Below, in pieces: positions 3,701 to 51,788 of a stretch of 64,000 bases of DNA. The DNA comes from Anaeramoeba ignava BMAN (lineage: Eukaryota; Protista; Anaeramoebae). Positions within the stretch are counted from its first letter, which is position 1, and each line of letters begins with the position of its first letter. The stretch lies in NCBI GenBank assembly GCA_028826165.1, contig JAPDFW010000113.1:62001-126000 (forward strand). Direction: 5' to 3'. The notes beneath the pieces were generated by a model. It saw only the letters and a list, made by a program, of their open reading frames with translations, was not told the DNA's origin and did no database searches. A program made the position numbers and the translations under genes.

Positions 3701-6072
3701 AATTAAAATTAAAATTAAAATTAAAATTAAAATTAAATTTAAATTCTCTCAGATTCATTTTCACAAGAATCATTATGCTCTTTCGATTGGATTGAAAATC
3801 AATCAAAACCTTGTTTGTTATCAATAACAGGATCAAATCTAATTCAAATTAAACCAATTCGGAATGTGATTCTTCCAAAATTTACAAATCATCCAAAAAT
3901 ACTTTTTACAGGAGATAATGCAATATTTAAAGAAAAAATATCACGTTCTCCATTTCCTCTTGAAATGCAAAAACCTTATTATGATATTTCCGAACTTATA
4001 AAAAAAAGAGCAAAAAATGGATATTCACTTGATATTTCAAAAAATATTTCAATTTTTTCCAAAAATTCAAAATCAGAAAATGAAGACTTATATTCTATTT
4101 GGAAATTTATAAGAAAATTAAATAAAACCAATAGTGAAATTCTTTCTTTAGGAGTAACAAAAATATTAACAAATCAAAAAGAAAATTCAAGTAATTGAAA
4201 AAATTAATCAATTTTTGGAATGAAAAAAATTTCTTTTCTTTTTTTCTTTAAAAAACAATATTTAAATCATAATTTATTTTTGTTTTTAGCTCAATTAACT
4301 AAATATCATGGAGATATTCAAATTCCTCAATTCGAAAGCAAAGAAAGAAAAGAAATTTTTCATTTTTGTGGATGGGAAAATTATAAAGAATGGAAAATGA
4401 GCAAATCAAAAACAATTGAAAGAATTATTGCAATTGCAATATTTAATTTTGATTTTGATTTTGCAATATCATTATTACAATCATTTGAAAAAGAAGAGAA
4501 AAATTCAAATCAAAAAAATTCAAATCAAAAATTTAAATCAAAAATTCAAATCAAAATGAAAATAATCAGACAGAAGAAGAAAATGAATATTCACTTCCAT
4601 ATTCTTTACTTTCATTAGCACTTTCAGGTGTTGAAGAAAAAGAAACAGAAAGATGGAAAGAAACTTGTCAAAATTTGGTTCCACTTTTTAAAAATCCATA
4701 TTTAAAAGTGGGATTTTCTTTTTTATCACAAGATTGGGATAATTGCCAAACAATTTCATATAATAGACAACTATTAATACAAGATAGAGTTGCATTTTCA
4801 TGCGCATTTCTTGATGATACAACACTTTTGGAAATTGTAAATTATTATGAAAAATTATATATGGAAACTGGTGAATTACTTGGACTTTTTTTTACAGGAA
4901 TTAATAGTTATAAAGCAATTTATTTAATAAGAAAATACGTCAACAAAACAAATGATATTCAAACTGCAATTCTTATATTAATTAATTTATTACCAACAAT
5001 TGTTAATACTCAAATAACTAACATCGATCCAAAAATTTCCGTTCAAGCTCTTTTACTTTCAAGAAATTGGTTGAAAACTTACCGTTCTCTTTTGGATCAA
5101 CTTGGATTATGGGAACAACGTGCTTTGTTTGATATTCAACTTAATTCCTTTTTAAATTTAAATAATATTACATGGCTGTCAAACAAAATGAGAAAAACAA
5201 TTGATGATAATTTTTCAGAAATTATTTGTATGTTTTGTAAATCAAAAATTCGCATTTCAGATGATGCTGAATTTTGTCCTAATTGTGGGAAATCTTTACC
5301 AAAATGTTATGTTTGTTCAAAAAGGATTGATTTTGGAAAATTACATCAACATCAAAATAAAAATCAAATTCAAATTGAAAATCAAATTCAAAATCAAAAT
5401 CAAAATCAAAATCAAAATGAAAATGAAAATCAAAATCAAAATCAAAATAAAATTCAAATTCAAAATCAAAATCAAAATCAAAATGAAAATCAAAATGAAA
5501 ATCAAATTGAAAATCAAATTGAAAATCAAATTCAAATTCAAAATCAAAATCAAAATCAAAATCAAATTAAAAATCAAAATCAAATTCAAATTCAAATTGA
5601 AAATCAAAATCAAAATCAAATTCAAATTCAAATTCAAAATCAAAATCAAAATCAAAATCAAATTCAAAATCAAAATCAAAATCAAAATCAAATTGAAAAT
5701 CAAAATCAAAATCAAAATCTAAATCAAAATCAAAATCAAAATCAAAATCAAAATCAAAATCAAAATCAAAATCAAAATCAAAATCAAATTAAAAATCAAA
5801 TTCAAATTCAAATTGAAAATCAAAATCAAAATCAAATTAAAAATCAAAATCAAATTAAAAATCAAATTCAAAATCAAAATCAAAATCAAAATCAAAATTT
5901 AATTGAAATTGATAATGATTCAGATTCTCATACTCTTTGTTGGTGTCAAAAATGTTTTCATGTTGCTCATCTTTCTTGTGCTGCTAAATGGTTTAAATCT
6001 CATTCAGAATGTGGTGTTTATCGTTGTCATTGTCATTGTTGGGAAATGACAACTAAAAAAAGGATTTTTTAA
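792..6072 (+). CDS. MIOS: GATOR2 complex subunit MIOS/Sea4 (WD40 + alpha-solenoid + C-terminal zinc finger/RING), multi-exon
   Basis: WD40 repeats (VRFFDLR, AKIWDLR, LKWSPTKRGLL), KKRAKNGYSLD, NPYLKVGFSFLS, DRVAFSCAFLDD, YVNKTNDIQTA, YRSLLDQLGLWEQRALFDI, CPNCGKSLPKCYVC and WCQKCFHVAHLSCAAKWFKSHSECGVYRCHCHC all match the Mio architecture. There is an apparent frameshift at ~4520-4550 in an A-rich repeat. Confidence 0.88.
1872..3430 (+). other. U12-type (minor) AT-AC spliceosomal intron in MIOS
   Basis: Donor ATATCCTT at 1872, branch TTCCTTGAT at 3407-3415, terminal AC at 3429-3430. Removal joins WDLRDISQP|IFELAPFQKQIQKLKWSP in frame. No GT donor is available near the exon end. Confidence 0.88.
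1912..3390. repeat. AAATCA / AAATCAATTTCT micro-minisatellite filling the AT-AC intron
   Basis: Direct inspection of 6-bp and 12-bp periodic repeats. Confidence 0.95.
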
Positions 6073-12044: not shown

Positions 12045-14680
12045 ATGTCTTTTACTCGAAGAATTTCATCAAGAAAATCAAAATTTAAACAAAGAATTGA
12101 ACTTGGAACACAAAAAGATAAACGATTTGATATTTCAGTTCAAATTAGTAAAGCAAAAAAAGATAAAATATTATCTTCAAAAAGAGAAGAAATGGAACAA
12201 AGGAAATATTTTCAAAAATCACAATTATTATATGAAGAAAAAATATTTGCAGATGTTAGTTTTTCTTTTTTAAATAAAACAATAAAACAATAAAACAATA
12301 AAACAATAAAACAATAAAACAATAAAACAATAAAACAATAAAACAATAAAACAATAAAACAATAAAAAAAAGCAATAAAACAATAAAAAAAAAACGTTAA
12401 AAAAAATTTAAATTAAAAATTTAAATTATATATTTTTTTAGCTTCAAAATCTTTCTTCAATTATTAAAGATCTTGAAAATGGTGATCCATATAGACAATT
12501 TAAAGCATTAGGAAGAGTAAGAAGAATGCTTTCATTAACTTTATTTAAACCTCCAGTTGCAGAAATTTTTCAATCTCAAGCTCTTTCAGTTATTTTAGGA
12601 TTTTTAAAATCAAATCAAAAATATTATCAAGTACTTTTTTTTATAAGAATCAAAATTATTTTATTTTCTTATTTTTTTTTATAATAAAAAACAGTTTGAA
12701 GCAATTGGATGTATTATGTATATATTAAGAAATGGTGAAAATTTAGCTCCTCAATTAGTTCATTTAGGAGTTATTGATGATTTATGTCAAATTGCAATGC
12801 AAAGAAATAATGATAATAATTTTGAAAATGCTCGTGAAGTAAATTCATTTATAAAATTCATTTATAGAATCAAAATATAAATCAAAATTAAAATTAAAAT
12901 TAAAATCAAAATTAAAATCAAAATTAAAATCAAAATCAAAATTAAAATTAAAATTAAAATTAAAATTAAAATCAAAATTAAAATCAAAATTAAAATTAAA
13001 ATTAAAATCAAAATTAAAATTAAAATTAAAATTAAAATTAAAATTAAAATTAAAATTAAAATTAAAATTAAAATTAAAATTAAAATTAAAATTAAAATTA
13101 AAATTAAAATTAAAATTAAAATTAAAATTAAAATTAAAATTAAAATTAAAATTAAAATCAAAAATAAAATTAAAATTAAAAATATAAATTAAAATATAAA
13201 TTAAAATTTAAATATAAATTAAAATCAAAAAAATAAAAAGGCACTTCAAGCTTTAGAAATTTTTGCACAACAAAATATTGAAATAAGAGATTTTTTAATA
13301 AATAAAGAAGTTATTCCTATTGTTTTAGATTTTGTTGACAGATCAAAACATTATTATTTATTATCAGTTATTGCAGCTTTATGTCAAGGAAATCCAACAC
13401 CAAAACATCAAACAATTGATAGTTTTCTCAAATTAATTCCTGATTTAATTGCTTTAAATATTGATACTGCAACTCAAAAAATACTTACTTCTTTATGTTA
13501 TCTTGCAACTGGAGATTATGAAACTCGTTTAAAATTGGAAGAACTTCCTATTGTAGAACAATTAAGGGGTTTTTTATCGTAAAAATCCAAATTAAAATTA
13601 GAATTCATTTATAAAATTAAAATTAAAATTAAAATATAAATTAAAATTAAAATATAAATTAAAAATTAAAATTAAAATTAAAATTAAAATTAAAATTAAA
13701 ATTAAAATTAAAAATTAAAATTAAAATTAAAATAAAAATTAAAATTAAAATTAAAATTAAATTAAAAATTAAAATTAAAATTAAAATTAAAAATTAAAAT
13801 TAAAATTAAAATTAAAATTAAAATTAAAATTAAAATTAAAATTAAAATTAAAATTAAAATTAAAATTAAAATTAAAATTAAAATTAAAATTAAAATTATA
13901 ATTAAAATTAATATTAAAATTAAAATTAAAATTAAAATTAAAATTAAAATTAGAATTCATTTATAAAAATTAAAATTATAATTAAAATTAAAATTAAAAA
14001 TTAAAATTAAAATTAAAATTCATTTATAAAATTAAAATTAAAAATTAATATTAAAATTAATTTATAAAATAAATAGTTCAGATAATTTTTTAATTAAAAC
14101 AAGAGCATTAAGATATTTATCAGATATGATTTCTGAAAATACTCAAATGACATATGAATTACTAAATCTAGGATTAATTGAAGTTCTACAAGAAATTTTA
14201 CATTCACAAGTGGAAGAAGAAGAAGAATTTTCAAGTATAATTCTTTTAAAACTGACAACAATTCCAAAAATACAAGAAGAAAATATAATTTTTGAGTTAG
14301 TTATTTGTTGTTTGGATTCTTGGTTTTTTAATGTGAAAAAAAATGGATTGCTTGCTGCTCAAAATTTAATCAATTTTCCTAACTTTCTACTTCGTATTAT
14401 TGATTTGGGTAGTTTAAAAGTTTTGAGTGGATCACTTAGTGAAAAAGATCCTCAATCTATTTCAATTATTGTTCAACTTATTCTTTCTATTTTGAAAATT
14501 TCTGAAGAATTACAAAATGTTGATGAATTGAAAAAATTTTTTGATTTATTTGAAGAAGCTCAAGTTTTTGATCAAATACAAAAAATTCTATTATCAACAA
14601 ATGAAGAAATAAAAAAGATTTGTCAGGAAATTTTAGATTTATTACTTAAAATTGAAGATTTTTTAGGACAAAATTTGTAA
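12045..14680 (+). CDS. Divergent importin-alpha-like ARM-repeat protein, 5 exons
   Basis: N-terminal IBB-like segment (RKSKFK...RFDISVQISKAKKDKILSSKR), then RVRRMLSLTLFKPPV, QFEA and LCQGNPTP. Exons approx. 12045-12254, 12442-12630, 12695-12838, 13241-13578 and 14077-14680, all GT-AG. Confidence 0.75.
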
Positions 14681-14986
14681 GGAAGATTTACTTATTTTAT
14701 TTTACTTTATTTTTATCAAAAAAAAAAAAAAAAAAATGGGAAAGAAAAATAAAACGAATTTTAATTAAATTTAATTCAATTTTAGTTTGAATTTTAGTTT
14801 GAAATTTTAATTAAATTTTGTTCCACTTTTTTAATTTTATTTTTAATAGAAATTTTAATTAATTTTGTTCCACTTTTTTAATTTTGAAATTTTGTTCCAC
14901 TTTTTTAATTTTGAAATTTTGAATTTTAATTTAATTTTGTTTGAAATTTTGAATTTTAATTTGAATTGAATTTGTTAAAATTCAAT

Positions 14987-15019
<33 letters not shown>

Positions 15020-15052
15020 AAGAATCAAAAATCAAAAATCAAAAATCAAAAA

Positions 15053-18000
15053 TCATTTGCGAGAATTCTTTGATTTATCTTTTCCCTTTTGTTTTTGTTG
15101 AGTAGAAACAATAGCATTAAACCATTCATCAGTTAAACCATTTGAATCAGAAGAAATAAAATACTCACGATATTCAACAGTAATTTTAAAGCAATATTTC
15201 TTTTTAAAATTAGAAAGAATTTCCACACCACCATCCTTAAGGGGAATAACACCACAAAGATTAGCGGATTTCTGGGATTTAAAATAGTAGAGACAATCAT
15301 CATTTTTAAGAACAAACCAACGTTTTCTCCAACCGCCTTTAAGACCACTTCCACCATATTCCTTTAAGAAACCTGACTTGAGAACTTTTTGTGGATCAAA
15401 TATCGATTCGGAACGCAGTTTTTTGTCCTGATGAGCTTGCTTAGATGTGTCTCCTTGAAGCAGATCTTTGATGAATTGCAGAATATTTGATCCAATGTTT
15501 TCGGGAATTGAATTCAAAGTATTTATGAATATTTTCAGTAAATAAGGTGGTGTGTCAATATCAAACCGATGCTTGTCAAAAATGAGTCTGACAAGAATTT
15601 CATTTGAAGAATCATCGCAATGAACAACGAGGAGCAAAGGATATCTGAGGGAGTCGTGTATCGAGACATTCTCAAAATTGAGCCCTGCTTTTTCGGTGTT
15701 TATTGAAAAAACATAATTATTTTCGCCAAGATCACGAACCGGGACAATAGAGTCTTTGGGGTAGTTTTCAACAAGCACAACACCGCCATCAAAGAGGTCT
15801 TGAGTCTCCTGCAACCCGCACCATTTGCGGATTTGGGATATTGTTGTGTTTGCAAAGTAGGAAGTTTTAACAATTCCAAGTTGGATCTGTTCAAGATGCT
15901 TGAGAATGCTTTGTTCCTTGATTAACGCGACCCTGAAAGGCAAAGCTCGCGAATAGTATCCGATTGTTTGTTCTATTCCTGGACCCAATATTGGCGGGCG
16001 ACCTGAGATATATGTTCCAAAACACAATGTGGGAGACTTGGAACGCAGTGCGAGTGCAATTGCCCATGAAAAATGAAAAATTGTTGATAAAATAATTTGG
16101 TTTGATTCTGCAACTTGTTTCAATTTTTGGAATTTCGAGGCTTCCACCCGCATGGAAAGCTCGTGGAAAGATACAGCATTCAAATGGAACTGTCCAGTGA
16201 TTTCGCGTGATTCGGTTTCGATTTGTGTATTGTCTTCAACGGTTTGTCCTGTTTCTCCAAAAGGAGTTGATCTTTTTTTTGTAATTGGAATTGAAAAGTC
16301 AACATCGCCAAAAATATGCTTGAAAAACCTTTTGGCTTCAACAATTTTCGTTGAATTTTCCCATTCAAGATATTTCAGATAGATTTCTGTTGGGTTTTTT
16401 ATTAAATTGCTTGGGAACGAGGGCGAATTTTTTTTGAAAATTGGATCATCTTGTTCGGAAAAGAAAAAATCGGTTTCAATCTCATTTTTAGAATCAGAAT
16501 CTTTCTTGCTATTGGCCTGTTCATTGGAATGAGATTTCGAATCAGGAGTGTATATTGATTGGATATAATCCTTTGAAACAACACCCTCATCTGGAGTCGC
16601 AATACTTGCTTTTCCGCTGGCAACCATGTTTGTGTACAATGCGAAGACTTCATTGATTATAATTGGAAGAGACCAAGAATCGAACATGAACGGCTCAAAA
16701 GAAAAAACCAAGAGATATTCGCCGCGTCCGTCTACATTAACGAGAATGAACCTATAAAGTGGAGGAGAGGCAAAACGAAATGTTTTTTGGCGATCCTCTT
16801 TTAAAAGTGTTGCTTTTAAATTGAATCTTTGTGCAGCATCGTATTTTTCCCAGCTAATCTCCTTCCAACTCAGCTCAACAGACTTTCTGACAATCTGCAA
16901 AATGGAGAAGTTTTCATCGTCGTCGTCGTAATCATCGTCTAAAGAGGACGAATTTTTGGTGAAATAGGACCGCATGATCGGATGTCGTGAGATCATCATT
17001 TCTAATGAATTTTTAAACAAATCCACATCGAATTTGCGCGCGTGGAATGAGAGCACAAGTTGCTTGCAAATATGCTGTTTGACGATTTGTTTTTTGCGGT
17101 GGAAAAATTGGATAATTTCATGCTGACCTCGAATCGGGAGAATTATATCTTGAATTTTTTCATCTTCAGAAAATAACGATTGAAAAACTGATGTTTTTGA
17201 ACTGAATGATAACGGAAAATTAATTGGATCAGTAAGCTCATCCTGTTTCAGAAACTCCTTGTACATTTTGGAAAGGATCTTGAGCGCATTTGTTGCCAAA
17301 GAGCGAATATCTTGTGAATTATGCGCTTTGTGATTGAATTGGAATTTAAAATGCAAAGCGCCTTTGTGAATGTAAGTGACAACTTCAATCAAATGTGGTC
17401 TTCCCTGTTGCGCGGGATATAGATCGCCGAAGACGGAGTTGTCAATAACAGGCCAATGGCTGACTTCTCCCAATGATAGGTTGTTCATATCGATATCGCC
17501 GAGAAATGCGAAGCTGAGCTCGGATTTTTTCAGTGGCTCAAGGATATTTTTGAAATCATTTGGAATATTATTCAGAAGCTGGTCGACATCGGAAACATCC
17601 TTTTTTGGAGGTGTGGGTTGTGCAGCAAGCGGTGTTGATTGTGATGGATTTTGTGGAGGTGTTTGTGGTGCGGATGTGGACGAATTCGGTAAAGTGAAAA
17701 TCGAATTGAGTCCATCCTTGTCTTCCTGCTTGGATTTTGATTTGGTTAAAGATTGGAATTTGCTGTGTTTTGTTTGTGTGCTTTGCGCTTCATTAGCCTG
17801 GTTTGCAAGTGCGATGCTTCTTGCTTTTTCTTTTTCAACAATCAAATTTTCCACAAATCCAGTATAAAGAAGTGAGTTTAATTGATTCAAAAACCGCAAT
17901 GATTCGTAAACTTGTTGCTTCACAACAGAAAGCGCTTTCTTCTTATCGGCAGTCACTCCTGGAGCGGTAAAGGAGAGAAGAAGAGGAACAAGTAATTCTT

Positions 18001-21000
18001 GCCAGCCGAGGATTTTTGAGTAGTTGTTGTTGAATATTGTTGAGCTTGTTTTTCTCTGCGAAAGAAAGAGATGAAAAAATTGATGGACAGATCCTGTCCA
18101 TTTATTCAAGGCAAGGGAAATTGCAGTCAAAACAATCGAGATTAACTCTTTCGGTTGATTTCTGCATATCCGCTTGAAAAGATCGTTGGTGATTTTGGAA
18201 TTGACAGCGAGCACTAAGCTTGACTTGTATTCTTGGAGATTTGCTGTCCATTGTTGACCTTCTCTTGGAAGATATTTGACAACATTTTGATCCGACACTT
18301 TCTTGGCGATTTTTTGCCAAAACAAATACGCCTCTTTTGTGGGCTCTTCAGAATACTGCTCAGCAATCCAACTGAAGTGAGACATGAGCTTCTCTTGCGA
18401 ATCCAATTTTGGATCGCGAATATTTTTTTGATAAGCATCGTCGAGTTTTTGAATGAAAAGTTTCATGGATTCAAGATCAATAACGAGATGATGGGATGAA
18501 ATCACGAGATATCGTTGATCATCAAGATCCTTAAAGGCAACAAATCTTGCAAGTGGGCCGTTTGCAATGTCAAAGCTTTTTTGCAATTGCGAACACATTT
18601 GTGGCATTGTTGGTGTGTTCGGAGTCACTTCAACGTATGCGAAAGAAAGCTTGATCTCCGGATTCACTTTCAATTTGTGTTTGAGTTTGTTTTCTGAAAA
18701 ACACATTTTGAAACACTCGTTTTGATCGTATATAAAATTGAGTGATTTCTCGAGCGTTGGAATATCAACATCCGTTTTAAGTTTAATAACAGATATAATA
18801 TTGTATTGATTTGGCTGGAAAAAATTCTGTTCCAAAAACCACGCTTGGATTGGCGAAAGTGGGCATTCGTTTTCTTGATAAAAATCAGGTGATTCAATTC
18901 GTTTTAAGCCTTGAAACGAAACAACTGAAAAATCGAAAATATTCGAGCGATTTTTCAAAACAAACGCTGCAAGATCAGACACCACGGGATACTGGAAAAG
19001 AGCTTGGTAACTGAATTTCACTCCCGCTCGCATCGCTTTGGAAACTATTCTCATCGCATCAATAGAATTCCCCCCGAGAATAAAGAAATTGTCATTTATA
19101 CTAACACGTTCGTATTTCAGAACAGTTGCATAAGTTTGGCACAAAAATTCTTCAACATCGTTTGTTGGCTTCATGTATTTTCTGTCTGGTTCGTTGTTGA
19201 AATTCTTCTCAATTTCATGTGTTGTGCGGATCTTGTTTCGATCCATTTTTCCGTTTTGATTGACTGGGAAATTTTCAAGAATTGAGAAGGAATCAGGAAT
19301 CCAAGTTGATGGTAAATATTCCTTCATGAAAACAGACATTTCCGTTGAAGAAGGCGGCACCTCAGTATTCGGCGCAATGCATGCAATGATTCTGCGTAGG
19401 AATTGCTTTTGGGGATCTCGAATAATTGTGATAATTTCGGAAATTTTTGGATGATTTTGCAGGATTGTCTCGACAGCCCACACATTGACTCGCTCGTCCT
19501 GGATATACAGCGAGTTTATTTCCTTTTCTCGATATCCCAGATGCTCGAGCTCGCCTGAAGGCAGAAGACATCCAGTCTCTCCTGTTCTGAACATAAGCCC
19601 GCCAGAAGGAGAACTCACAAATAGTGAATCAGTGATTTCTTGATTTTGATAATATCCATTGCACATTGCTTCTCCACACACAAAAATAGTCCCTTTGGCT
19701 CCAGAAGGAACTGGTCTGTAGTGATCATCCAGGATGAAAATCTCCGAGTCGGCAAATGATTTTCCAATAGGCGCCGCATTTGTAGTACTTCTATCTATCG
19801 CGTGAAGCAATTCATTTGATTTTATTTTTGAATCATATAGTTTTATTAATGAAACTATCGATGAATTTTCAGGAATTCCTGAACAATATATTAATTCATT
19901 CGGTTTTTTTTCTAATTGAAGAAATGCATCTAATAAATCGTATTCTATTGGATCTCCATACACAATTACTTGCTCAAATCCTTCAAATGGCCACGCCACT
20001 TGTTGATTTAATTCCAATATTTCTTGCTGTGAATTTTCGACATTTTTTCCCAAATTTTGATTTTCATTTGATTTTAATTCGAAAAATTTTGATTCACCAT
20101 CACTTGATAAATCCGATTTATTCCCTTCGTTGAAATCCTCCTCATGAAACTCGAAATCAACTGAACTATCCGAATCATCTTCATCAAAATCATTCTTTTT
20201 AGGTTTTTTGACTTGGTTTTTCTCTTTTGATTTTTTTGGATCATTTGAAATTTGTTTTTCGCTTTTTTTCTCAATCTCATCCTCATTTTCTGTTTCATTA
20301 AGAAATGTTTCAATTTGTGGGAGATTATAAAGTTCCTCATTCAAAATTCTTCTGAAAGAGAACGTAGTAATAACAATAAATTTCATATCCAGAATTTTTG
20401 CAACGACTGGGAATTTATTACTAAGAACAAATTTTTTAGAAGTTATCGCGAGTTTTCCTCCATTTAGAAGTGTTCCCCACAATTCAATAATGCCTCTTTC
20501 CGAAGAGAGAGGTGAATAATGTGCCACTGCGTCTGTCATTTTGAAGTGTTCTTTGCAAGCAAGTGATTTATTGATGATATTTGAATGTGCGATTTGAATT
20601 CCAAGTGGTGTTCCTTCATCAGAAAATGTCACTAAAATGCATGCATTATCACTGCCTTTTGTTGTTTTGGTAGCTTTTGGTATTCCTTGTGTTTTGTGGT
20701 CTTGTTTTTTGTGTATATTGTCTATTATTTCTTCAGTTAAACACATTATTTTTAACGAGTGATTTTCAATATCATTTTCAATTCCTGAAAAAATATCATT
20801 TGTTTTTTGGCCTGTAAAAAGTAAATTAATCCCGAATTGTTTGACCAATTTGCTTGTTAGTATTTTACTAAGTCGAGGATCAAGGGGAACATAAACACAA
20901 CCTTTATAAATATAAATATTTAAAATAAATTTAAATATAAATATAAATATAAATAAAAATTTAAATTATAATATTTTTTTCTTTTACCAAGTTTCAAAAT

Positions 21001-23247
21001 TGCAAGTATCGCAATAGTTGAAGGAATAGAACATAGAATAGATATCGCAATCAATGATCCAGGCTTCACATTTAATTCTTCCTTCATGTATTTTGCAAAA
21101 GAAGTCGATTTCATATCCAGTGATTCATATGTCATTTTTTTATTTAAAGTTCGAATTGCAATTGAATGTTTTTTCTTTTGAACAATTTTTTGGAAGAATT
21201 GAAGAATGTTTTTCTTAACTGATTTTTGCTTTTTTGAATGTTCTGATAACTGGAATTGTTTATTCCATTCTTGAATAATTTTTTCATTTTCAAAACGCGT
21301 TAAAAGAGGAAAAGAATGAATTGAAATATCTTCTTGAGAAGAAACTAATTTGTCAAGAATTGTTGTGAAATGAGTAGTAAAAAGAGAAATGAAAGAATCG
21401 CTGAATCGCGAAGTGTTGAAAATGATTCTGTTATGAAACATAATCTTAGTCTCAATATCAATCTTTTTTGAATACTCTTCGTCAATCATCAAAACAATTA
21501 AATCAAATGTTTCAAGTATTTTATATTCATATTTATTTTTGACTTCCTTTTTCATTGTTGATGATAATCTTCCAACTCGATTCCTTACATTTTCATCCAG
21601 TTTTTCCCGTTCAACTTCTGCGCTATTTTGAATATTTAGTTCAAATGATTGATTCAAAACATATTTTTTCTTTTCAAATTTTTCCACTATATTTGATGAA
21701 TCAAAAACAAATAAAATTCTTGATGGATTTTTTTTGTTGAAATTGTCAAGTAGTTTTGAATATAATGTGTCTTTATATGGTTTTAATTCTTGTATTTTTT
21801 CTGATACATTTTGGAGATATTCTTGGAATGTTTCAAATTCAGAAATATTTGAATTGAAAAAAACTGGATTTATTGGTATTTTTTTGTTTTCTGTGTTTTG
21901 TGGGATTTTGTCCATCATAATTGATACTGAAATGTTATCTGATGAAACAAAATGAGAAAGAAGGAAAGTGAATGAACTCAGAAAGAAATCAAATTTGGTG
22001 TTATTTGGGAAAGATTTGGAAATTAAATTGTATTTTTGGAATACAAAGCAATCTGATGAATTGAGTGGAGTTGAATCTTTTTCATTTTTTTCGTTTCCAA
22101 AGAAGGATAATTGTTGAGTTTTCTTAAGTTCATCGTTCCAGAATATTGTACTTTATAAATTTTAATTTATTTATAATTTAATTTAATTTAATTTTTAATT
22201 TATAATTTAATTTTTAATTTAATTTATAATTTAATTTATAATTTTAATTTTTTATAATTTAATTTATAATTTTTTATTTATAATTTATAAATTTTAATTT
22301 ATAATTTTTAATTTATAATTTTTATTTATAATTTTATTTTATTTTATTTATATTTTTATTTTATTTATAATTTAATTTTATAATAATTTAATTTTATAAT
22401 TTTATTTTATTTATAATTTTATTTATAATTTTATTTTATTTATAATTTTATTTTATAATTTTATTTATAATTTTATTTATAATTTTATTTATATTTTTAT
22501 TTATATTTTTATAATTTTATAATTTTATTTTAATTTTTTTAATTTATAATTTAAATTTTATTTAATTTAATTTATATTTTATTTATAATTTTATTTATTT
22601 ATTTATAATTTTATTTTATTTTTTATTTATAATTTTATTTATAATTTTATTTTATATTTTATATTTTTTATTTTATAATTTTATTTTATATTTTAATTTT
22701 ATAATTTTAATTTATAATTTTAATTTTATTTTAATTTAATTTTTAATTATAATTTTATTTATAATTTAATTTATAATTTTAATTTATAATTTTTAATTTA
22801 TATTTTATTTTAATTTTAATTTATAATTTTAATTTATATTTTAATAATTTAATTTATAATTTATTTATATTTTAATTTTATTTATACCTTATTTATTTAT
22901 AATTTTTTAAATTTTATAATTTAATTTATAATTTTATTTTTATTTATAATTTTATTTTATATTTTTTTAATTTATATATTTTAATTTATAATTTAATTTT
23001 ATAATTTTATTTATTTTAATTTTATAATTTAATTTATAATTTTATTTATAATTTTTATAATTTTAATTTATAATTTAATTTATAATCAATTTTATTTAAT
23101 TTTATTTATATTTTATTTATTTTATTTATATTTTTTATTTATATTTTGATTTAGATTAATTTCTTTTTTGCCATTTATTGTAATATTAATTTATTTATTG
23201 AAATAAGAAATTGCTTTTTTTTTTTATAAAATATAAAATTACTCCAT
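15053..23247 (-). CDS. NRPS-like multidomain protein: partial C, adenylation, PCP, epimerization, condensation, PH domain (~2338 aa)
   Basis: Exons 23247-23243, 22150-20988 and 20901-15053 join in frame. Motifs: A1 MTYESLD, A2 LKLGCVYVPLDP (created by the splice), PIGKS, FRTGE, A10 NQNGKMDR; PCP DNFFILGGNSI; E-type LSPIQAWF, HHLVID, FAFLGDID; C-type FGTYISGRP, TIGYYSRALPFRV; PH KSGFLKEYGG...WRKRWFVLK...YFISSDS...EWFNAI. Confidence 0.9.
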
Positions 23248-28827: not shown

Positions 28828-29838
28828 TTAATTTTGATTTTGATTTAAATTTTCATTTTGATTTCGATTTAAATTTTCATTTTGATTTTGATTTTCATTT
28901 AAATTTTCTTGTGAATCTTCTTGTAAATTTTCTTGTAAATTTTCTTGTAAATTTTCTTGTAAATTTTCTTGTAAATTTTCATTTAAATTTTCATTTAAAT
29001 TTTCTTGTAAATTTTCTTGTAAATTTTCTTGTAAATTTTCATTTAAATTTTCTTGTAAATTTTCATTTAAATTTTCTTGTAAATTTTCTTGTAAATTTTC
29101 TTGTAAATTTTCTTGTAAATTAAGATATTTTTCATATAAAAAAAGAGCACAAAGAGTTTTTCCATCAGAAGTTTCTTTCCAAACATCATTTAATTTAAGA
29201 ACACGAATGGAAATAAATTCACCTTCATGATGCAAACCAGTATTTTTTCCATTTAATTGAAGAATAGAAGAAGTAGGAAGAAAATGTTGATAAAGAAACA
29301 AACGAATAAAACCAGAACAAAGATCACAAGAAGGAATAATTCCTTTAAATTTTGATGAATAAAACAAAGAAGTGAGATCAACAAGATCACTTGTTTGAAC
29401 AATTAAACCAGTTTCTTCTTGCATTTCTCTAACAGCAACACTTTTGAATTGATTGGATGATTCAATTAATCCAGCAGGAATTTCAATAAATGATTCCAAA
29501 CCAATTGGTACTCTTGGTTGACTAGTTAAAATTACATATTTATCTTTTTCATCATAAAGAATAACTAAAATTGCTACTGCTCCTCCTCCTCCAAATACTG
29601 TTGTTTCTGTTGTTTCTCCAGTTTTTTTCATTTTTGTTGTTGATTTAAATTTTAAAAATCCAATTCTTGATCCAAAAAAATCAACTGATTCAATAACAAT
29701 TTTTTCAAGTTGAATTATTTCTGATTTTTGTATTTGTTTTATCCATTCAATAAAAAATTCACATTTTTTTAATTCTTCTATATCAATTTTAGTTGTTGAA
29801 TTTATTGGAATAACTTGATTTTGAACAATAATTTCCAT
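28828..29838 (-). CDS. Nudix hydrolase 14-like (ADP-sugar pyrophosphatase) with a (LQEN)n tail
   Basis: VDFFGSRIGFLKF, GGAVAIL, QPRVPIG..FIEIPAG, Nudix box AVREMQEETGL, TGLHHEGEFI and DGKTLCALFLY. Confidence 0.88.
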   Translation of the reverse strand: MEIIVQNQVIPINSTTKIDIEELKKCEFFIEWIKQIQKSEIIQLEKIVIESVDFFGSRIGFLKFKSTTKMKKTGETTETTVFGGGGAVAILVILYDEKDKYVILTSQPRVPIGLESFIEIPAGLIESSNQFKSVAVREMQEETGLIVQTSDLVDLTSLFYSSKFKGIIPSCDLCSGFIRLFLYQHFLPTSSILQLNGKNTGLHHEGEFISIRVLKLNDVWKETSDGKTLCALFLYEKYLNLQENLQENLQENLQENLNENLQENLNENLQENLQENLQENLNENLNENLQENLQENLQENLQENLQEDSQENLNENQNQNENLNRNQNENLNQNQN

Positions 29839-37825: not shown

Positions 37826-40800
37826 TTATTTTTTTATATTTTCAAAAGATTTCCATAAATTTTTTGGATAACGAACAAATCCAAATTCAAAAATATAAGT
37901 TCCATATAAAAATTTGCATTTGTTAACTAAAGAAAGAGAATTAAAAGGATTAGAACTTTTACGAACAAATTTTTCTTTTTCTATTCCTCTTTTCGGATTT
38001 TTGATAAGTTTATTAAAATCTGTTTCAATAAATCCATTTATAAACCCATTATCATTTTCATTTTGATTTTCAATTTGATTTCGATTTTGATTTAGATTTA
38101 GATTTTGATTTTGATTTATATTTTGATTTTGATTTTGATTTTCATTTTGATTTTGATTTTGATTTTGATTTTGATTTTGATTTTGATTTTGATTTTGATT
38201 TTGATTTTGATTTTGATTTTGATTTATATTTTCATTTTGATTTTGATTTTGATTTTGATTTTCAATTTGAATTTTATTTTCATTTTGATTTTGATTTTGA
38301 TTTTGATTTTGATTTTGATTTTGATTTTGATTTTTATTTTCATTTTGATTTTCATTTTGATTTTCATTTTTATTTTGATTTTGATTTTCAATTTGATTTT
38401 GATTTTGATTTTGATTTTCATTTTCATTTTCATTTTCATTTTGATTTTGATTTTGATTTTGATTTTTATTTTGATTTTGATTTTCATTTTGATTTTGATT
38501 TTGATTTTGATTTTGATTTTCATTTTGATTTTTAATTTCAATTTCATTTTGATTTTGATTTTGATTTTGATTTTGATTTTCATTTTGATTTTGATTTTTA
38601 TTTTGATTTTGATTTTGATTTTGATTTTCATTTTTAATTTGATTTTGATTTTTATTTTGATTTTGATTTTTATTTTGATTTTCATTTTCATTTTGATTTT
38701 GATTTTGATTTTTATTTTGATTTTGATTTTGATTTTGATTTTGATTTAGATTTTCATTTTGATTTTGATTTTGATTTTCAATTTGATTTTGATTTTGATT
38801 TTCAATTTGATTTTGATTTTCATTTTCATTTTCATTTTGATTTTGATTTTCATTTTGATTTTCAATTTGATTTTGATTTTCAATTTCATTTTGATTTTGA
38901 TTTTGATTTTGATTTTCAATTTCATTTTTAATTTGATTTTGATTTTCAATTTCATTTTTAATTTCATTTTCATTTTCATTTTCATTTTCATTTTTATTTT
39001 CAATTTTATTTTTATTTTCAATTTTATTTTCATTTTCATTTTCATTTTTAATTTCAATTTTATTTGTATTTGCTTCTTCTTTATCTAAATCAAATCCAAA
39101 TTGTAAGCAAGAAAGATAAAACAAATAAGCACTATCAACTTGTTGCAAATCCATTAAACATTGAAAAACTTTATAAAAATAACCAATCATTAAATAAAGT
39201 TCGATAGCTTTTTGATAATTTTTTTTTGTAATTAAATGATTAGCATAATTTTCAAAAAATTTTCGACTTTTCTCAAAAGATAAATGATATTTTGCAATTT
39301 GACAAGAATAGTTCCATTTATGAACATTTTGGAGTAATTCACAAGCATATTCATATAAACCAACAGAACATAAAAGTTCAGCACCATCAAAATAATTATT
39401 ATTTTCAATTAAATTTGTGCCAATAATTTTGATTGTTTGAATATATGCTTCTTTTGATATTTGAACTGAAAATGTTGTTGCAAAAAGCATATTTCTGAAA
39501 AAATTTGGATCATTAACTGGTGTTTTCATAAGTATTTCTAATCCCTTTTCTCGCTCATTTATTAGACTATAATTTTTTACAATCTCTCGGAAATGTGGAT
39601 TTCCATTTTCAAGAATTTTTGAATGAATGTTGGCTGTTTGAAGTTTTTCTCTAGTTAAAATTTCTTGATTTTGAAATAATCCCAAATTTGAAGATAATTG
39701 GAATTTGTGTTCTTGTTTTGAATGAGAAAAATAATCATCTTGAATAAAATTTTCATCTTCATTTTTAATTTCAATTTCATTTTTAATTTCATTTTCAATT
39801 TCATTTTCAATTTCAATTTCATTTTCATTTTGATTTAAATTTTGATTTAAATTTTGATTTGAAAAATGTTGAAGAAAACGAAGAACTAATTTCCAAAATC
39901 TTTCTTCTTTTGAATCTCCAAATATTATTGAAGTGGCAATACATAATTCAGGAAAATTTTGACAATTTTCAATTTGTTTCTTTTTTTTCCTGGAAAAGGA
40001 ATCAATTAATTTAATCAAATTCATTTCATCCAAATTATCACTATCTCTTAAAAGGAAGAATTCATTTTGATTAAAATTTGTTGGTTGTTTATCATAAATT
40101 TTAAGTCCATGTTGAAAAGCAACTTTTAGTTGAGAAAATAATTTTGGAGAAAGTAAATATGGATTTTCTGTTGGAATTGGAGGATTCTCAGAATTAATAA
40201 TTTTGTTTAAAATTGCTAATTTTTTATTTAAAATTCTTAAACATCCATCACTACACACTATTTTTAAAATTAAAAAAAAAAGAAAAAGAAAATGTTTTAA
40301 ATTTTTAACTGAAATTTTCAAATTGAATTTAAATTTTATACAAGCAATAAGTGAATGATCTGAAATCCAATCGATATATTCAATTTTATAATTCAAATCC
40401 AATTTGGAATTATTTAAATATGTTTTTTTCAATAATGTTAAATCAGCAATCATTAATCCTCCATCATTAAATAAAATTAAAAATTTTAAAGATTGTTCAT
40501 TTGGTGATAATTGAATTTGCTTAATTTTATTTGATCCAACAGAAAAGTTGGTTTTTTTTGGTTCTGGATAATTTATAACACAAAATAATTGACCTGAATC
40601 ATTCCCAAATATTAAAAGACTTTTAATAAAAAAAGATTAATATTAAAAAATTTTTATCCAATTTTTGTTTTTGTTTAAATTACGAATTATTTTGAGCTAT
40701 ACAACTCAATTTAGTCATTGGTTTTAAAAATTGAATTGCATTTAAAGTTGAAATCATTCGATCTTTAATTTCCATCATAATTCCAATTGCTATCAAAAAA

Positions 40801-48747: not shown

Positions 48748-51458
48748 ATGAAATTAATTCTTTTCTTTTCCTTTTTCTTAATTATTAATATTTTCTTAAT
48801 TCAATCAAACCAAAATCATCAACAACCAATATCAACATTAATATCAAAAATATTAACAGAAACACAAACAACAAGATATTATTCTTCTTTCGATGAAGCT
48901 TGGATTTGGAATTTATTAGATCAATTTTCAGGTTCAGGATATTTTGGAAGTTCTGTTTCAATTTATAAAGAGGTTCTTGTTATTGGATATTATGATGGAA
49001 AAACAGCATATGTTTACAGATATAATGGAACAAATTTTGAACTTGAACAAACTTTGAATGAACCTTCAGCTCCAAATTTTGGATATTCTGTTTCAGTTTA
49101 TGAAGATGTTATTGTTATTGGAGCTTATTATCCAAAAAAAGCATTTATTTACAGATATAATGGAACAATTTGGAATCTTGAACAAACTTTGAATCAATCA
49201 GCTACATATTTTGGATGTAGTGTTTCAATTTATGAGAATGTTACTGTTATTGGAGCTGATGGTGCAAATCAAGCATTTATTTACAGATATAATGGAACAA
49301 TTTGGAATCTTGAACAAACTTTTAATGAATCAGTTCAATCTTTTGGAGAAAGTGTTTCAATTTATGAGAATGTTACTGTTATTGGAGGTGATATAGCAAA
49401 TCAAGCATATGTTTACAGATATAATGGAACATTTTGGAATCTTGAACAAATTTTGAATGAATCAGTTCAATATTTTGGATGGAGTGTTTCAATTTATGAA
49501 GATGTTATTGTTATTGGAACTTACGATTCAATTCAAGTATATGTTTACAGATATAATGGAGCAAATTTTGAACTTGAACAAACTTTGAGTGTATCAACTG
49601 CAGCTTTCGGATATTCTGTTTCAATTTATGAGAATGTTATTGTTATTGGCGCTTATAAATCAAAAAAAGCATATGTTTACAGATATAATGGAACATTTTG
49701 GAATCAAGAACAAACATTGAATGAATCAGCTTTATATTTTGGTTATTCTGTTTCAAATTATGGGAATTTTACTGCTATAGGAAATAATGGTGCAAAGAAA
49801 GTATTTGTTTATGAAGCAAATTTAATTCCTCAAGTTAATATTGTTAATTGTTCTTCTTTGTTTTCATCATTTGATTGTTATTGGGATGAAATTCAAATTC
49901 CAAATTTGGTTTATCAAATCAATTATGGATATGATTGGATTGATATTGATTCTCCAATTCTTGAAGATGGGAATGTTTATTATCAACAATTTAATTCTTC
50001 AATTTATGATAATATTACAGGAAATGAATATTATTCAATTCAAATTCAAGCTTGCGATAATGAAACATCAATGAAATGTGGTGAATCTTCTTCTTTGGTT
50101 AATTTAACAACAAAAATTGATTCTGTAAAAGATTTTCAATTATCAAATCCTTCAAATTATTCAATTAATGTTACATGGAATTATCCAAATGTGCAGATCA
50201 ATGGAGGAATTGCTCATCTTAATCATTATAATCTTTCTTATTTAAATCAATCTCAACCTGATTTAATATCTTTCATTTCAGTTGATAATTCTTCACTTGA
50301 TTATTTTTGAATAATTTAGAATGTGGAAATGATTATAATATTTCAATTTGTGGATGTAGAACGCAAGAATGTGAAGGAGAAGATAAAGGAGAAATTGTTG
50401 AATCATCAATTTCATTAATATTTGGAGAAGTTACAGATTTTTCATGTTCAATTTCAAATTCAATCGATCTTAATTGTAATTGGAATCAACCAATTAATTG
50501 TTCAATTCCATTTTATTATAATTTAACTTATCAATCAATTTATCAAAATGATTCAGGAAATTATCAACCAACATTATCAAATCAACAATTTACAGTTCAA
50601 TTTCCAAATCAAGAATATCAAATCAATGTATCAGCATGCAATTCAAATGGAAAATGTGGATATATTTCAACAATTTCAATTACAACTGATAATTTAACTT
50701 CTCCAATAATTTATGAAACAATTTCCAAAATTGAAGAAATTGAATTTAATTTCACAAAATTAACAAATGCAAACAATTATTCAATTTCACTTGATAATGA
50801 AACAAATTGGGAAAAATTCACATCTCTTGATTTAAGTGGAAATGAAATAATTGGAACCATAAGTGAAATATCAGGAAATATTGAATATAATATTTCAATT
50901 CGAGGATGTGTTGATTTAAATTGTGAAACACCATATTTAGGATTACCTAGTTTAATTAATTCAACAAAAGCTAAATTAGGAAATATTACTTCATTAAATT
51001 GTAATTCATTAATTAATGGATTTGTTTGTAGTTGGGATTCATTAAATTTATCAAGTGGATTAAAAGGATATTCATTTACTTACAATTCAATTTCAATTTG
51101 TTTATCAACTTTAACAACAAATTATTCAATTTCAGGATTAAATGGAGGAGAATATTATGAAATTTCAATTTATTCATCAGCTGATTTAAATTGTTCATTT
51201 AATGAATATTCAGGAATTAATTCAACAACATCAATTACAACATTATCAACAAATGAATCTAATGATAATTCAAAAACAACAGCAATAACTTTAGGAATAA
51301 TTATTCCTATTATTGTTATTTCAGCTATTATTATTGGAATTATTTTATACAAAAAGAAAAAATCAAAATCAAATTCAAAATCAAACTCAAAATCAAAATC
51401 AAAATCAAAATCAAAAAACAAAGAAGAAAAAGAACTTCATAATGATTTGGATATTTAA
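48748..51458 (+). CDS. Type I membrane protein: signal peptide, 7-blade FG-GAP-like beta-propeller, FN3-like stalk, TM, basic tail (paralog A; 1-nt frameshift at ~50305)
   Basis: Seven ~44-aa FGxSVSIYExVxVIGA...YRYNG repeats, FN3-like W/Y patterns, and TM AITLGIIIPIIVISAIIIGIILY. ORFs 48748-50310 and 50307-51458 together align to paralog B; the T-run has 5 T here versus 6 T in B. Confidence 0.85.
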
Positions 51459-51788
51459 TTCCAATTCAATTTTAAATTCCAAATTTCCATTTCAAATTCA
51501 TTTTTCTTTTTTCTTTCTAAAAATTCAAAATAACAATAATAAAAAATTAAAAATTCAAAATTAATTTTTAATAATATTTAGTCATTTTTCTTTCTTTTTC
51601 TTTTCAATTCAAAAAAAAATTTTTGTTTTCTCACTTTTTTAATTAAAAAAAATTTAATCATTTTTTTTCTTTTTAATTTCAACAAGCAAAAGTAAGAAAA
51701 ATAAAATTTGAAATAAACAACACACAAACATAAACTTATTTTAATTATTTTAACTTTATTTTTATTTAAATAAATCCAAATAGCCAAA

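What the first reader, a model, noticed from the sequence alone, without database searches (positions are those of the whole stretch)
15053..23247. Bacterial-type NRPS module with degenerate catalytic sites fused to a eukaryotic PH domain
Seen: a 2338-aa protein with half-C, A, T, E, C and PH domains and two spliceosomal introns, one splitting motif A2. It is therefore an integrated eukaryotic gene. Compared with consensus NRPS motifs, the A3 P-loop (YTSGTTGxPKG) has become VTFSDEGTPLG, A7 TGD has become TGE, A8 GRxD has become GYRE, and an acidic ~110-aa insert splits the A domain. The last C domain has FEPFMFDSWS in place of HHxxxDGWS. In contrast, the carrier serine (GGNSI, codon 19064-19066), the A10 lysine and the E-domain HHLVID are kept. 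A PH domain sits where a thioesterase or reductase release domain is expected. Inference: an NRPS fragment, probably laterally acquired, has been repurposed as a membrane-targeted scaffold, sensor or trans-acting epimerase/carrier instead of a peptide synthetase. I do not know this architecture from characterised proteins.
Basis: partly seen in the sequence, partly recalled or inferred. Interest (0 to 1): 0.82.

Follow-up and report, generated by a model that had tools for sequence, protein, structure and literature searches.

The report
Dead NRPS module fused to PH domain
In the anaerobic amoeba Anaeramoeba ignava, a bacterial-type peptide-synthetase module has lost nearly all its catalytic residues and gained a PH domain, yet it is expressed and kept by selection as one of six such genes, so it is probably a repurposed non-enzyme, although the genome paper counts it as a natural-product synthetase.

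Summary
Window 15053-23247 (minus strand) is one expressed Anaeramoeba ignava gene. It equals GenBank KAJ5068805.1: 2338 aa, three exons, two introns. The domain order is half condensation (C) domain, adenylation (A), carrier (T), epimerase-like (E), C, then PH.

Two more appear: the E domain lacks its EGHGRE glutamate, and this copy's PH domain has Glu at the usual beta1 lysine.

The gene is one of six PH-ended paralogues on six contigs.
- All six have lost the A3 P-loop, A7 Asp, A8 and the terminal-C HH motif.
- All six start in the middle of a C domain.
- Two lost the carrier serine, and five lost the second E-domain histidine.

Selection still acts. dN/dS against the 71%-identical paralogue is 0.14 overall and 0.05 in T. 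Every copy keeps more than 2000 codons across at most two long open frames. Four have transcript-derived proteins.

A profile of terminal C plus PH, run against 1.84 billion proteins, matched in full only A. ignava entries.

The genome paper's antiSMASH table lists this exact gene as an "NRPS" region and does not mention the PH domain. I found no paper describing such a fusion.

Most likely this is a non-catalytic, NRPS-derived scaffold or sensor. Membrane targeting is inferred, not shown. The scan's first readers also noted paralogues on other DNA.

The parts
23243..23247 (-). Coding part of exon 1: ATGGA (Met plus two bases of Asp), followed by the donor GTAATT.
   Evidence: Equals the start of KAJ5068805.1. 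ATGGA|GTAA also lies upstream of paralogues C101 and C115. The transcript-derived protein P0165 of paralogue C68 starts MD|. No RNA data were available for this copy.
22151..23242 (-). Intron 1, 1092 nt, mostly a degenerate AT-rich minisatellite.
   Evidence: Sequence read. Tandem Repeats Finder gives period 12-13 and about 75 copies (run on 22230-23242 only). The homologous intron in C101 is under 100 nt.
20988..22150 (-). Exon 2: remnant of a C domain (C-terminal subdomain only), the C-A linker, and A-domain motifs A1 and A2 (first part).
   Evidence: Paralogue alignment. Profile A2 against PDB matches C domains of McyB, TycB and BacC. AlphaFold model and Foldseek matches are all C-type domains. 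Pfam AMP-binding begins near 21195.
20902..20987 (-). Intron 2, 86 nt, GT...AG, inside motif A2.
   Evidence: Sequence read. The transcript-derived P0001 reads LKLGCVYVPLDP across it. The intron is shared with C101 and absent from C68, C115 and C8.
19238..21195 (-). Degenerate adenylation domain, interrupted by intron 2 and by the acidic insert. A3 at 20600-20632, A7 at 19577-19591, A8 at 19487-19537, A10 Lys at 19247-19249.
   Evidence: Pfam AMP-binding scores 59 bits here and 387 bits in the canonical A. ignava NRPS. TIGR01733 scores 152 bits against a cut-off of 317. Alignment to LgrA. Coordinates.
20009..20293 (-). Acidic, low-complexity insert between A4 and A5.
   Evidence: Present only in this copy and C101. 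Selection is relaxed, dN/dS 0.65.
18959..19147 (-). Carrier (T) domain. The GGNSI serine codon TCT is at 19064-19066.
   Evidence: Pfam PP-binding 38.8 bits. Coordinates. It has the lowest dN/dS in the gene, 0.046.
17129..18901 (-). Epimerase-type C-family domain. HHLVID lies within 18467-18496 and FLSQRK replaces EGHGRE within 18050-18073. A Pro/Gln-rich insert lies near 17606-17671.
   Evidence: The best PDB sequence matches are the TycA, GrsA and TycB3 E domains. Coordinates.
15479..17128 (-). Terminal condensation domain with FEPFMFDSWS in place of HHxxxDGWS (16670-16699), split by a disordered insert.
   Evidence: PDB sequence matches are the McyB, BacC and TycB C domains. The model matches the SrfA-C C domain at TM 0.72-0.74 normalised to the target. 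The motif is lost in all six paralogues.
15101..15382 (-). PH domain. The WRKRWF basic motif is at 15314-15331.
   Evidence: Pfam PH 65.2 bits against a cut-off of 25.1. Closest solved PH domains are PLEKHA6/5, myosin X, cytohesin/GRP1, DAPP1 and TAPP1. It is the best conserved module of the family, 47% mean identity.
15053..20901 (-). Exon 3 with the stop codon. The open frame is uninterrupted from A2 through the PH domain.
   Evidence: ORF list. Its translation equals the C-terminal 1948 aa of KAJ5068805.1.

Best explanation
This gene is one member of a six-gene Anaeramoeba ignava family. The family descends from a single fragment of a bacterial NRPS assembly line: the back half of a C domain, then A, T, E and the next module's C domain. 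That fragment acquired a eukaryotic PH domain at its C-terminus and introns.

Shown here:
- The family as a whole has lost the residues needed for adenylation, epimerisation and peptide-bond formation.
- It has no release domain.
- It has no complete catalytic C domain.
- Its folds, very long open frames and expression are nevertheless kept by purifying selection.

Inferred: the protein no longer makes a peptide. It works as a large non-catalytic scaffold or ligand sensor. The old A, T, E and C folds would act as binding surfaces or pockets. The PH domain, the best conserved module, would couple the protein to a membrane phosphoinositide or to a partner protein.

In this copy and its sister C101, the carrier serine and the A10 lysine survive, so some residual carrier role cannot be excluded.
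For: One gene and one transcript:
- The 1931-codon frame runs through C and PH without a stop.
- Transcript-derived proteins carrying NRPS and PH domains together exist for this copy, C68 and C115. The C101 transcript contig is chimeric with this gene over its PH end.

Family-wide loss of catalytic motifs in six paralogues:
- A3, A7 Asp and A8 are lost in 6 of 6.
- The terminal-C HH motif is lost in 6 of 6 (FEPF/FESF/YSPV).
- The N-terminal C domain is truncated in at least 5 of 6; C101 was left out of that profile.
- The carrier Ser is lost in 2 of 6.
- The second E-domain His is lost in 5 of 6.
- The EGHGRE Glu is lost in this copy and C101.

Family thresholds: TIGR01733 scores 152 bits against a cut-off of 317. 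A canonical NRPS in the same genome scores 514.

Selection: dN/dS against C101 is 0.14 overall, 0.046 in T, 0.067 in E, 0.10 in the C-terminal half of A and 0.125 in C.

Folds: the predicted C fold is retained.

Single origin: the family forms one clade (SH-aLRT 100) on a stem of about 3 substitutions per site.

PH domain: it is the most conserved module, and its beta2 motif WRKRWF/WKKRWF keeps W, K, R, W and F in every copy.
Against: - No biochemical or localisation data exist.
- This copy is the least degenerate of the six. It keeps the A10 Lys, the carrier Ser and the E-domain HH.
- The T domain is the most constrained part.
- One Sfp-type phosphopantetheinyl transferase gene exists in the genome. 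Some carrier-based chemistry therefore remains possible.
- The A7 change, Asp to Glu, is conservative.
- The PH pocket of this copy has Glu at the canonical beta1 Lys position, which weakens the membrane-targeting step.
- dS between the two closest copies is 1.3, near saturation, so the dN/dS values are approximate.
Confidence: 0.58

Rival explanations
1. It is a working, if unusual, NRPS that makes a small peptide or amino-acid derivative. This is what the antiSMASH 'NRPS' call in the genome paper implies.
For: - antiSMASH Region 69.1 (57,053-105,247) equals this gene plus or minus 20 kb.
- All NRPS domain folds are detectable.
- The A10 Lys, the carrier Ser and one HH motif are kept.
- An Sfp-type transferase is present in the genome.
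- Purifying selection is strong.
Against: - The A3 P-loop carries Asp-Glu where Thr-Thr is expected, and A8 is unrecognisable.
- TIGR01733 scores less than half its cut-off.
- There is no complete catalytic C domain. The first is a half domain and the last lacks HH.
- There is no TE or R release domain.
- The same losses, and more, occur in all five paralogues.
Confidence: 0.1
2. It is a trans-acting carrier or epimerase partner. The T domain would be phosphopantetheinylated and loaded by another enzyme, for example the canonical C-A-T-C-A-T-R NRPS on contigs C47 and C99. The PH domain would place this chemistry at a membrane.
For: - The carrier Ser is kept in 4 of 6 copies.
- T has the lowest dN/dS.
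- HH is kept in this copy's E domain.
- A canonical NRPS and one transferase exist in the genome.
Against: - The E-domain glutamate (EGHGRE) is missing here.
- The sister copy has HR in place of HH, yet the E domain evolves at dN/dS 0.07. The constraint is therefore not on catalysis.
- Two paralogues have no carrier serine.
- No docking elements were found.
- The canonical NRPS has its own T domains.
Confidence: 0.17
3. It is a decaying remnant of a lateral transfer with no function, or an assembly or contamination artefact.
For: - Catalytic motifs are eroded.
- Low-complexity inserts evolve almost neutrally (dN/dS 0.65).
- One transcript contig, P0001, differs from the genome by one base in an A-run.
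Against: - Six loci on six contigs each keep more than 2000 codons, in one or two long open frames, in a genome of about 20% GC where stop codons are frequent.
- dN/dS is 0.14.
- Transcript-derived proteins exist for four copies.
- Introns, eukaryotic neighbours and the PH fusion exclude bacterial contamination.
Confidence: 0.03

Closest known systems
Bacterial multimodular NRPSs with an A-T-E module followed by a D-donor-accepting C domain (tyrocidine TycA/TycB, gramicidin S GrsA, linear gramicidin LgrA, microcystin McyB)
   Same: Same domain folds in the same order. These are the best sequence matches in the PDB and in protein databases, at 22-30% identity.
   Different: Here A3, A7, A8, the E-domain Glu and the terminal-C HH are lost. 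The first C domain is a half domain. There is no release domain. The gene has a PH domain and spliceosomal introns and sits in a eukaryotic chromosome.
X-domain of glycopeptide antibiotic NRPSs (teicoplanin, PDB 4tx2/4tx3)
   Same: It is a C/E-type domain that has lost catalysis and serves as a protein-recruitment platform (my own knowledge of that system). It appears among the structural matches of the terminal C model.
   Different: The X-domain is a single dead domain inside an otherwise active bacterial assembly line. Here the whole module looks dead, and it stands alone with a PH domain in a eukaryote.
Eukaryotic NRPS-like proteins (Drosophila Ebony, fungal Lys2, animal AASDH)
   Same: They have an A-T core of bacterial NRPS type, kept as a single nuclear gene in a eukaryote (my own knowledge).
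   Different: To my knowledge, Ebony and Lys2 are active adenylating enzymes. None has E, C or PH domains. This family's A domains fail the adenylation-domain threshold.
PH-domain lipid sensors and transfer proteins (PLEKHA family, cytohesin/GRP1, CERT)
   Same: The PH domain is closest in sequence to PLEKHA6/5, myosin X PH2 and cytohesin/GRP1. A PH domain is attached to a large module with internal tunnels or pockets.
   Different: The partner module is NRPS-derived, not a GEF, START or ORD domain. This copy has Glu at the beta1 Lys position that contacts phosphoinositide in GRP1.
Canonical NRPS of the same genome (C-A-T-C-A-T-R, contigs C47 and C99)
   Same: Same genome, also AT-rich and split into several open frames. 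Also listed as an antiSMASH NRPS region.
   Different: Its motifs are intact (A3 GTSGKPKG; TIGR01733 514 bits). It ends in a reductase release domain and has no PH domain. It is not sister to the PH family in the tree.

Membership tests
Functional NRPS module | A-domain nucleotide-binding motifs: A3 P-loop, A7 Y(R/K)TGD, A8 GRxD...RG.RIE | tested here: not met
   A3 is VTFSDEGTPLG, A7 is FRTGE, A8 is GYREKEINSLYIQDERV, by alignment to LgrA and to the canonical A. ignava A domain.
Functional NRPS module | Curated adenylation-domain model TIGR01733 at or above its cut-off | tested here: not met
   152.1 bits against a cut-off of 317.4. The canonical NRPS of the same genome scores 514.3.
Functional NRPS module | A10 catalytic lysine and carrier-domain serine | tested here: met
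   NGKMDR Lys at 19247-19249 and GGNSI Ser at 19064-19066. Whether the serine is modified cannot be tested here.
Functional NRPS module | At least one C domain with HHxxxDG for peptide-bond formation | tested here: not met
   The N-terminal C is only the C-terminal subdomain. The terminal C has FEPFMFDSWS.
Functional NRPS module | Release domain (TE, R or a catalytic terminal C) | tested here: not met
   Pfam finds only a PH domain after the last C domain.
NRPS epimerisation domain | E-type sequence and the catalytic His (HHxxxD) plus Glu (EGHGRE) pair | tested here: not met
   The best PDB matches are the TycA, GrsA and TycB3 E domains, and HHLVID is present. EGHGRE aligns to FLSQRK, so the Glu is missing. 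Five paralogues lack the second His.
ANL (AMP-binding) superfamily fold | Pfam PF00501 above its gathering score | tested here: met
   59.2 bits against 29.9 for exon 3. The exon 2 part adds 24-27 bits.
PH domain | Pfam PF00169 above its gathering score and a PH-like predicted fold | tested here: met
   65.2 bits against 25.1. The model shows a run of beta strands followed by a C-terminal helix, as in a PH fold.
Phosphoinositide-binding PH domain | Basic beta1 Lys and beta2 (R/K)-x-R pocket residues | tested here: inconclusive
   The beta2 motif WRKRWF is present. Its W, K, R, W and F are invariant in the family; C115 reads WKKRWF. The beta1 Lys aligned to PLEKHA6 is Glu in this copy and Lys in four paralogues. 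Lipid binding cannot be tested here.
Pseudoenzyme | Homologous to an enzyme family, lacking catalytic residues, yet expressed and under purifying selection | tested here: met
   Motif losses. dN/dS 0.14. Transcript-derived proteins. Absence of activity itself cannot be tested here.

The most novel reading that the evidence does not exclude
The six proteins are a lineage-specific family of receptors built from a dead NRPS module. The former A and C pockets would bind bacterial amino-acid-derived or peptidyl metabolites. The PH domain would couple that recognition to phosphoinositide-marked membranes such as the phagosome or the symbiosome. This would give Anaeramoeba a way to sense or sort its bacterial partners.
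Probability: 0.12. Interest if true: 0.9.

Novelty: new variant of a known kind. Interest (0 to 1): 0.68.

Why it matters
NRPS modules are known almost entirely as enzymes. A whole module that is catalytically eroded, kept by selection, multiplied to six copies and fused to a PH domain would be a rare case of a eukaryote turning a laterally acquired biosynthetic machine into a non-enzymatic protein.

It also has a practical consequence. The Anaeramoeba genome paper lists seven antiSMASH "NRPS" regions in A. ignava and suggests their products may shape symbiont colonisation. Five of those seven regions are this degenerate PH family. The other two are 98.4%-identical copies of one canonical gene. 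The real peptide-making capacity of A. ignava is therefore probably much smaller than that table suggests.

Tried and rejected
- RNA reads. Only one public run holds this stretch, kind unknown, kept as contigs. So I have no read-level check of intron 1, the transcript start or the A-run. TRF was run on 22230-23242 and ARAGORN up to 22150. One local script regex scanned the upstream stretch, including those places, for ATGGA|GTA.
- Database control. I searched the neighbouring WDR11 ORF to check whether A. flamelloides proteins are in the database. It returned nothing, not even itself. Absence of the family from other Anaeramoeba species is therefore not established.
- Donor lineage. A tree of the A(C-terminal half)-T-E segment with 45 bacterial segments puts the family on a very long stem with no resolved sister.
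- Genome paper supplements. They hold none of the locus tags or accessions I searched (this gene, C68, C115) and no mention of a PH domain.
- Literature. Searches for NRPS together with pleckstrin or PH domain found nothing relevant.
- Spliced model. Wherever a spliced protein was needed I used the public proteins P0001 and P0167 by reference, or searched the exons separately.
- tRNA scan of 13000-22150: none found.
Full report
**What is there.** The window is very AT-rich: about 20% GC overall and down to 4% between genes. On the minus strand, an uninterrupted frame of 1931 codons (15053-20848) is preceded by a 332-codon frame (20920-21918). Pfam finds AMP-binding, AMP-binding_C, PP-binding, Condensation (three stretches, 230 bits) and a C-terminal PH domain (65 bits against a cut-off of 25).

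**Organism.** The organism is Anaeramoeba ignava. The region is 100% identical to the EukProt transcript-derived protein P0001. It belongs to the same 90% cluster as GenBank KAJ5068805.1 (P0167, 2338 aa, "hypothetical protein M0811_12226"). Earlier notes of this scan had named the organism. I confirmed it independently.

**Gene model.**
- Intron 2 (20987-20902, 86 nt, GT-AG) splits motif A2. P0001 reads LKLGCVYVPLDP across it.
- Intron 1 (23242-22151) follows a coding start of only five bases, ATGGA. It is mostly an AT-rich minisatellite.
Three observations support it:
  - The 78 codons upstream of the first in-frame Met align with the N-termini of the paralogues.
  - A transcript-derived protein of paralogue C68 starts MD|LQITSYW, although the genomic frame there has no Met.
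  - The same ATGGA|GTAA lies upstream of C101, with an intron under 100 nt, and of C115.
- P0001 is out of frame with the genome upstream of an A-run near 21189-21194, because the transcript contig has one extra A. The genome version keeps the conserved N-terminal frame open, so I take it as correct.

**Domains and motifs.**
- The N-terminal ~300 aa are the C-terminal subdomain of a condensation domain. A profile of five paralogues hits the McyB, TycB and BacC C domains at positions after the catalytic motif (E=1.9e-8). The structural matches of an AlphaFold model are all C-type domains, although the model's confidence is modest (pLDDT 58.6).
The acidic insert, the retained A10 Lys and the GGNSI serine at 19064-19066 are also confirmed.
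- The first full C-type domain is closest to E domains (TycA 2xhg, GrsA 5isw, TycB3 6ta8). It keeps HHLVID, but EGHGRE aligns to FLSQRK, so the second catalytic residue known from GrsA is absent.
- The last C domain is closest to the McyB, BacC and TycB C domains and has FEPFMFDSWS in place of HHxxxDGWS. Its predicted fold matches the SrfA-C C domain at TM 0.72-0.74, normalised to the target.
- The PH domain is closest to PLEKHA6/5, myosin X PH2, cytohesin/GRP1, DAPP1 and TAPP1. It keeps WRKRWF. At the position of the beta1 lysine this copy has Glu (LKEYGG), where the sister copy has LRKHGG.

**It is a family.** A six-frame search of the genome finds six PH-ended paralogues on contigs C114 (this gene), C101 (71% identical), C68, C115, C8 and C59. 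It also finds a canonical NRPS on C47 and C99. Across the six PH-ended copies:

| Feature | State in the six paralogues |
|---|---|
| A3 P-loop, A7 Asp, A8 | lost in all six |
| Terminal-C HH | lost in all six (FEPF, FESF or YSPV) |
| N-terminal C domain | all six begin in the middle of it |
| A10 Lys | clearly kept only here and in C101 |
| Carrier Ser | lost in C115 (GGNEI) and C8 (GGNHL) |
| Second E-domain His | kept only here (C101 HR; C68 and C115 HN; C8 and C59 HK) |

No copy has both E-domain catalytic residues in register. TIGR01733, NCBI's adenylation-domain model, scores 152 bits here against a cut-off of 317. The canonical C47 gene scores 514.

**Selection and expression.**
- Against C101, dN/dS is 0.14 overall. 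By region it is 0.046 (T), 0.067 (E), 0.10 (C-terminal half of A), 0.125 (C), 0.26 (PH) and 0.65 (acidic insert). dS is about 1.3, so the ratios are approximate.
- All six keep more than 2000 codons, in one or two long open frames, in a genome where stop codons are common.
- Transcript-derived proteins exist for four copies.
- Across the divergent copies, PH is the best conserved module (47% mean identity), followed by T (40%). E is the least conserved (25%).
- In a tree of the A(C-terminal half)-T-E segment, the family is one clade (SH-aLRT 100) on a stem of about 3 substitutions per site. It lies apart from 45 bacterial segments and from the canonical A. ignava NRPS. No donor can be named.
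- The shared ATGGA mini-exon shows that at least one intron predates the duplications.

**Is the architecture known elsewhere?**
- A profile of terminal C plus PH was run against 1.84 billion representative proteins. Only three matches spanned the whole profile. Two are A. ignava proteins (the C68 and C115 copies); the third, P0002, is a chimeric A. ignava transcript contig joining C101 to this gene's own end, so its full-profile match is not independent. Everything else was a large bacterial NRPS matching the C domain alone.
- Word-based searches found PF00169 together with NRPS domains only in A. ignava.
- Caveats: two paralogues (C8, C59) are themselves missing from that library. My control for the presence of A. 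flamelloides proteins failed. "Only in A. ignava" therefore means "in what these databases hold".
- Literature searches found no description of an NRPS-PH fusion.

**What the genome paper says.** PMC11550330 mentions "several non-ribosomal peptide synthases" and lists antiSMASH regions.
- Region 69.1 (57,053-105,247) is exactly this gene (contig C114 77,053-85,247) plus or minus 20 kb.
- Regions 7.1, 27.1, 57.1 and 105.1 are C115, C68, C101 and C8.
- Regions 55.1 and 140.1 are the two canonical copies, which are 98.4% identical.
- The locus is thus already flagged as an NRPS, but its PH domain and its degeneracy are not mentioned.

**How it most likely works.**
- Shown: it is a transcribed nuclear gene; its catalytic residues are lost across the family; purifying selection acts on it; the predicted folds are retained; the PH domain is conserved.
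- Inferred: the protein is a pseudoenzyme. It would be a large scaffold or ligand sensor whose PH domain ties it to a phosphoinositide-marked membrane or to a partner protein. The glycopeptide X-domain, a dead C-type domain used to recruit P450 enzymes, is a precedent for part of this idea and appears among the structural matches.
- I put this reading at about 0.58.
- A residual carrier or trans role scores about 0.17. In its favour: Ser and Lys are kept here and in C101, T is highly constrained, and one Sfp-type transferase exists on C113.
- A truly active synthetase scores about 0.10.
- Junk or artefact scores about 0.03.
- The rest is unassigned.

**Limits.**
- No biochemical data and no read-level RNA data were available.
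Spliced proteins were taken from public entries by reference.

Noticed in passing
L018 (G000:C47:1-10000) and L019 (G000:C99:1500-11499): A canonical-looking NRPS, C-A-T-C-A-T-reductase, with intact motifs (A3 GTSGKPKG; TIGR01733 514 bits). It occurs twice at contig ends, 98.4% identical over 8.2 kb. The two may be haplotigs or a recent duplicate. It is probably the only real NRPS of this genome.
   Followed up: partly
window 15056-20848 compared with neighbouring genes; L013-L017: GC3 of the PH-NRPS family is 0.22-0.46. It is 0.04-0.18 in five of six neighbouring genes and 0.15 in the canonical NRPS. Within each paralogue, GC3 is lower in the PH part and in the first 300 codons. The cause is unknown. 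Candidates are incomplete amelioration, codon selection or a position effect.
   Followed up: partly
window 22230-23169: Intron 1 is almost entirely a degenerate AT-only minisatellite (period 12-13, about 75 copies). The homologous intron in the 71%-identical paralogue C101 is under 100 nt.
   Followed up: partly
window about 21189-21194: The EukProt transcript protein P0001 implies one more A in this A-run than the genome has. That shifts its predicted start into another frame. Either the transcript contig or the long-read assembly has a homopolymer error.
   Followed up: partly
P0002 (EukProt a347219_194.p1): This transcript-derived protein is a chimera. Residues 1-1200 equal paralogue C101 and residues 1201-1597 equal this gene. 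It is most likely an assembly artefact between paralogues.
   Followed up: yes
L022/L013 (G000:C101 about 208300-208600): In paralogue C101 the N-terminal exon (frame ending near 208299) and the next frame (starting near 208319) are not in one frame. This suggests an extra small intron or a frameshift that this gene lacks.
   Followed up: no
L020:1186-1986 (G000:C113): The only match to the 4'-phosphopantetheinyl transferase family in the genome. It is a 266-aa Sfp/AASDHPPT-type ORF with the WSLKESFIKADGKG motif.
   Followed up: partly
window 4675-6072, 28828-29838, 37826-40453, 48748-54488: The neighbours are ordinary eukaryotic genes: MIOS, a NUDIX hydrolase, WDR11, and two FG-GAP/fibronectin-III repeat proteins. 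Other first-reader notes on this window concern a U12 intron in MIOS and an intron array in a TLDc gene.
   Followed up: no
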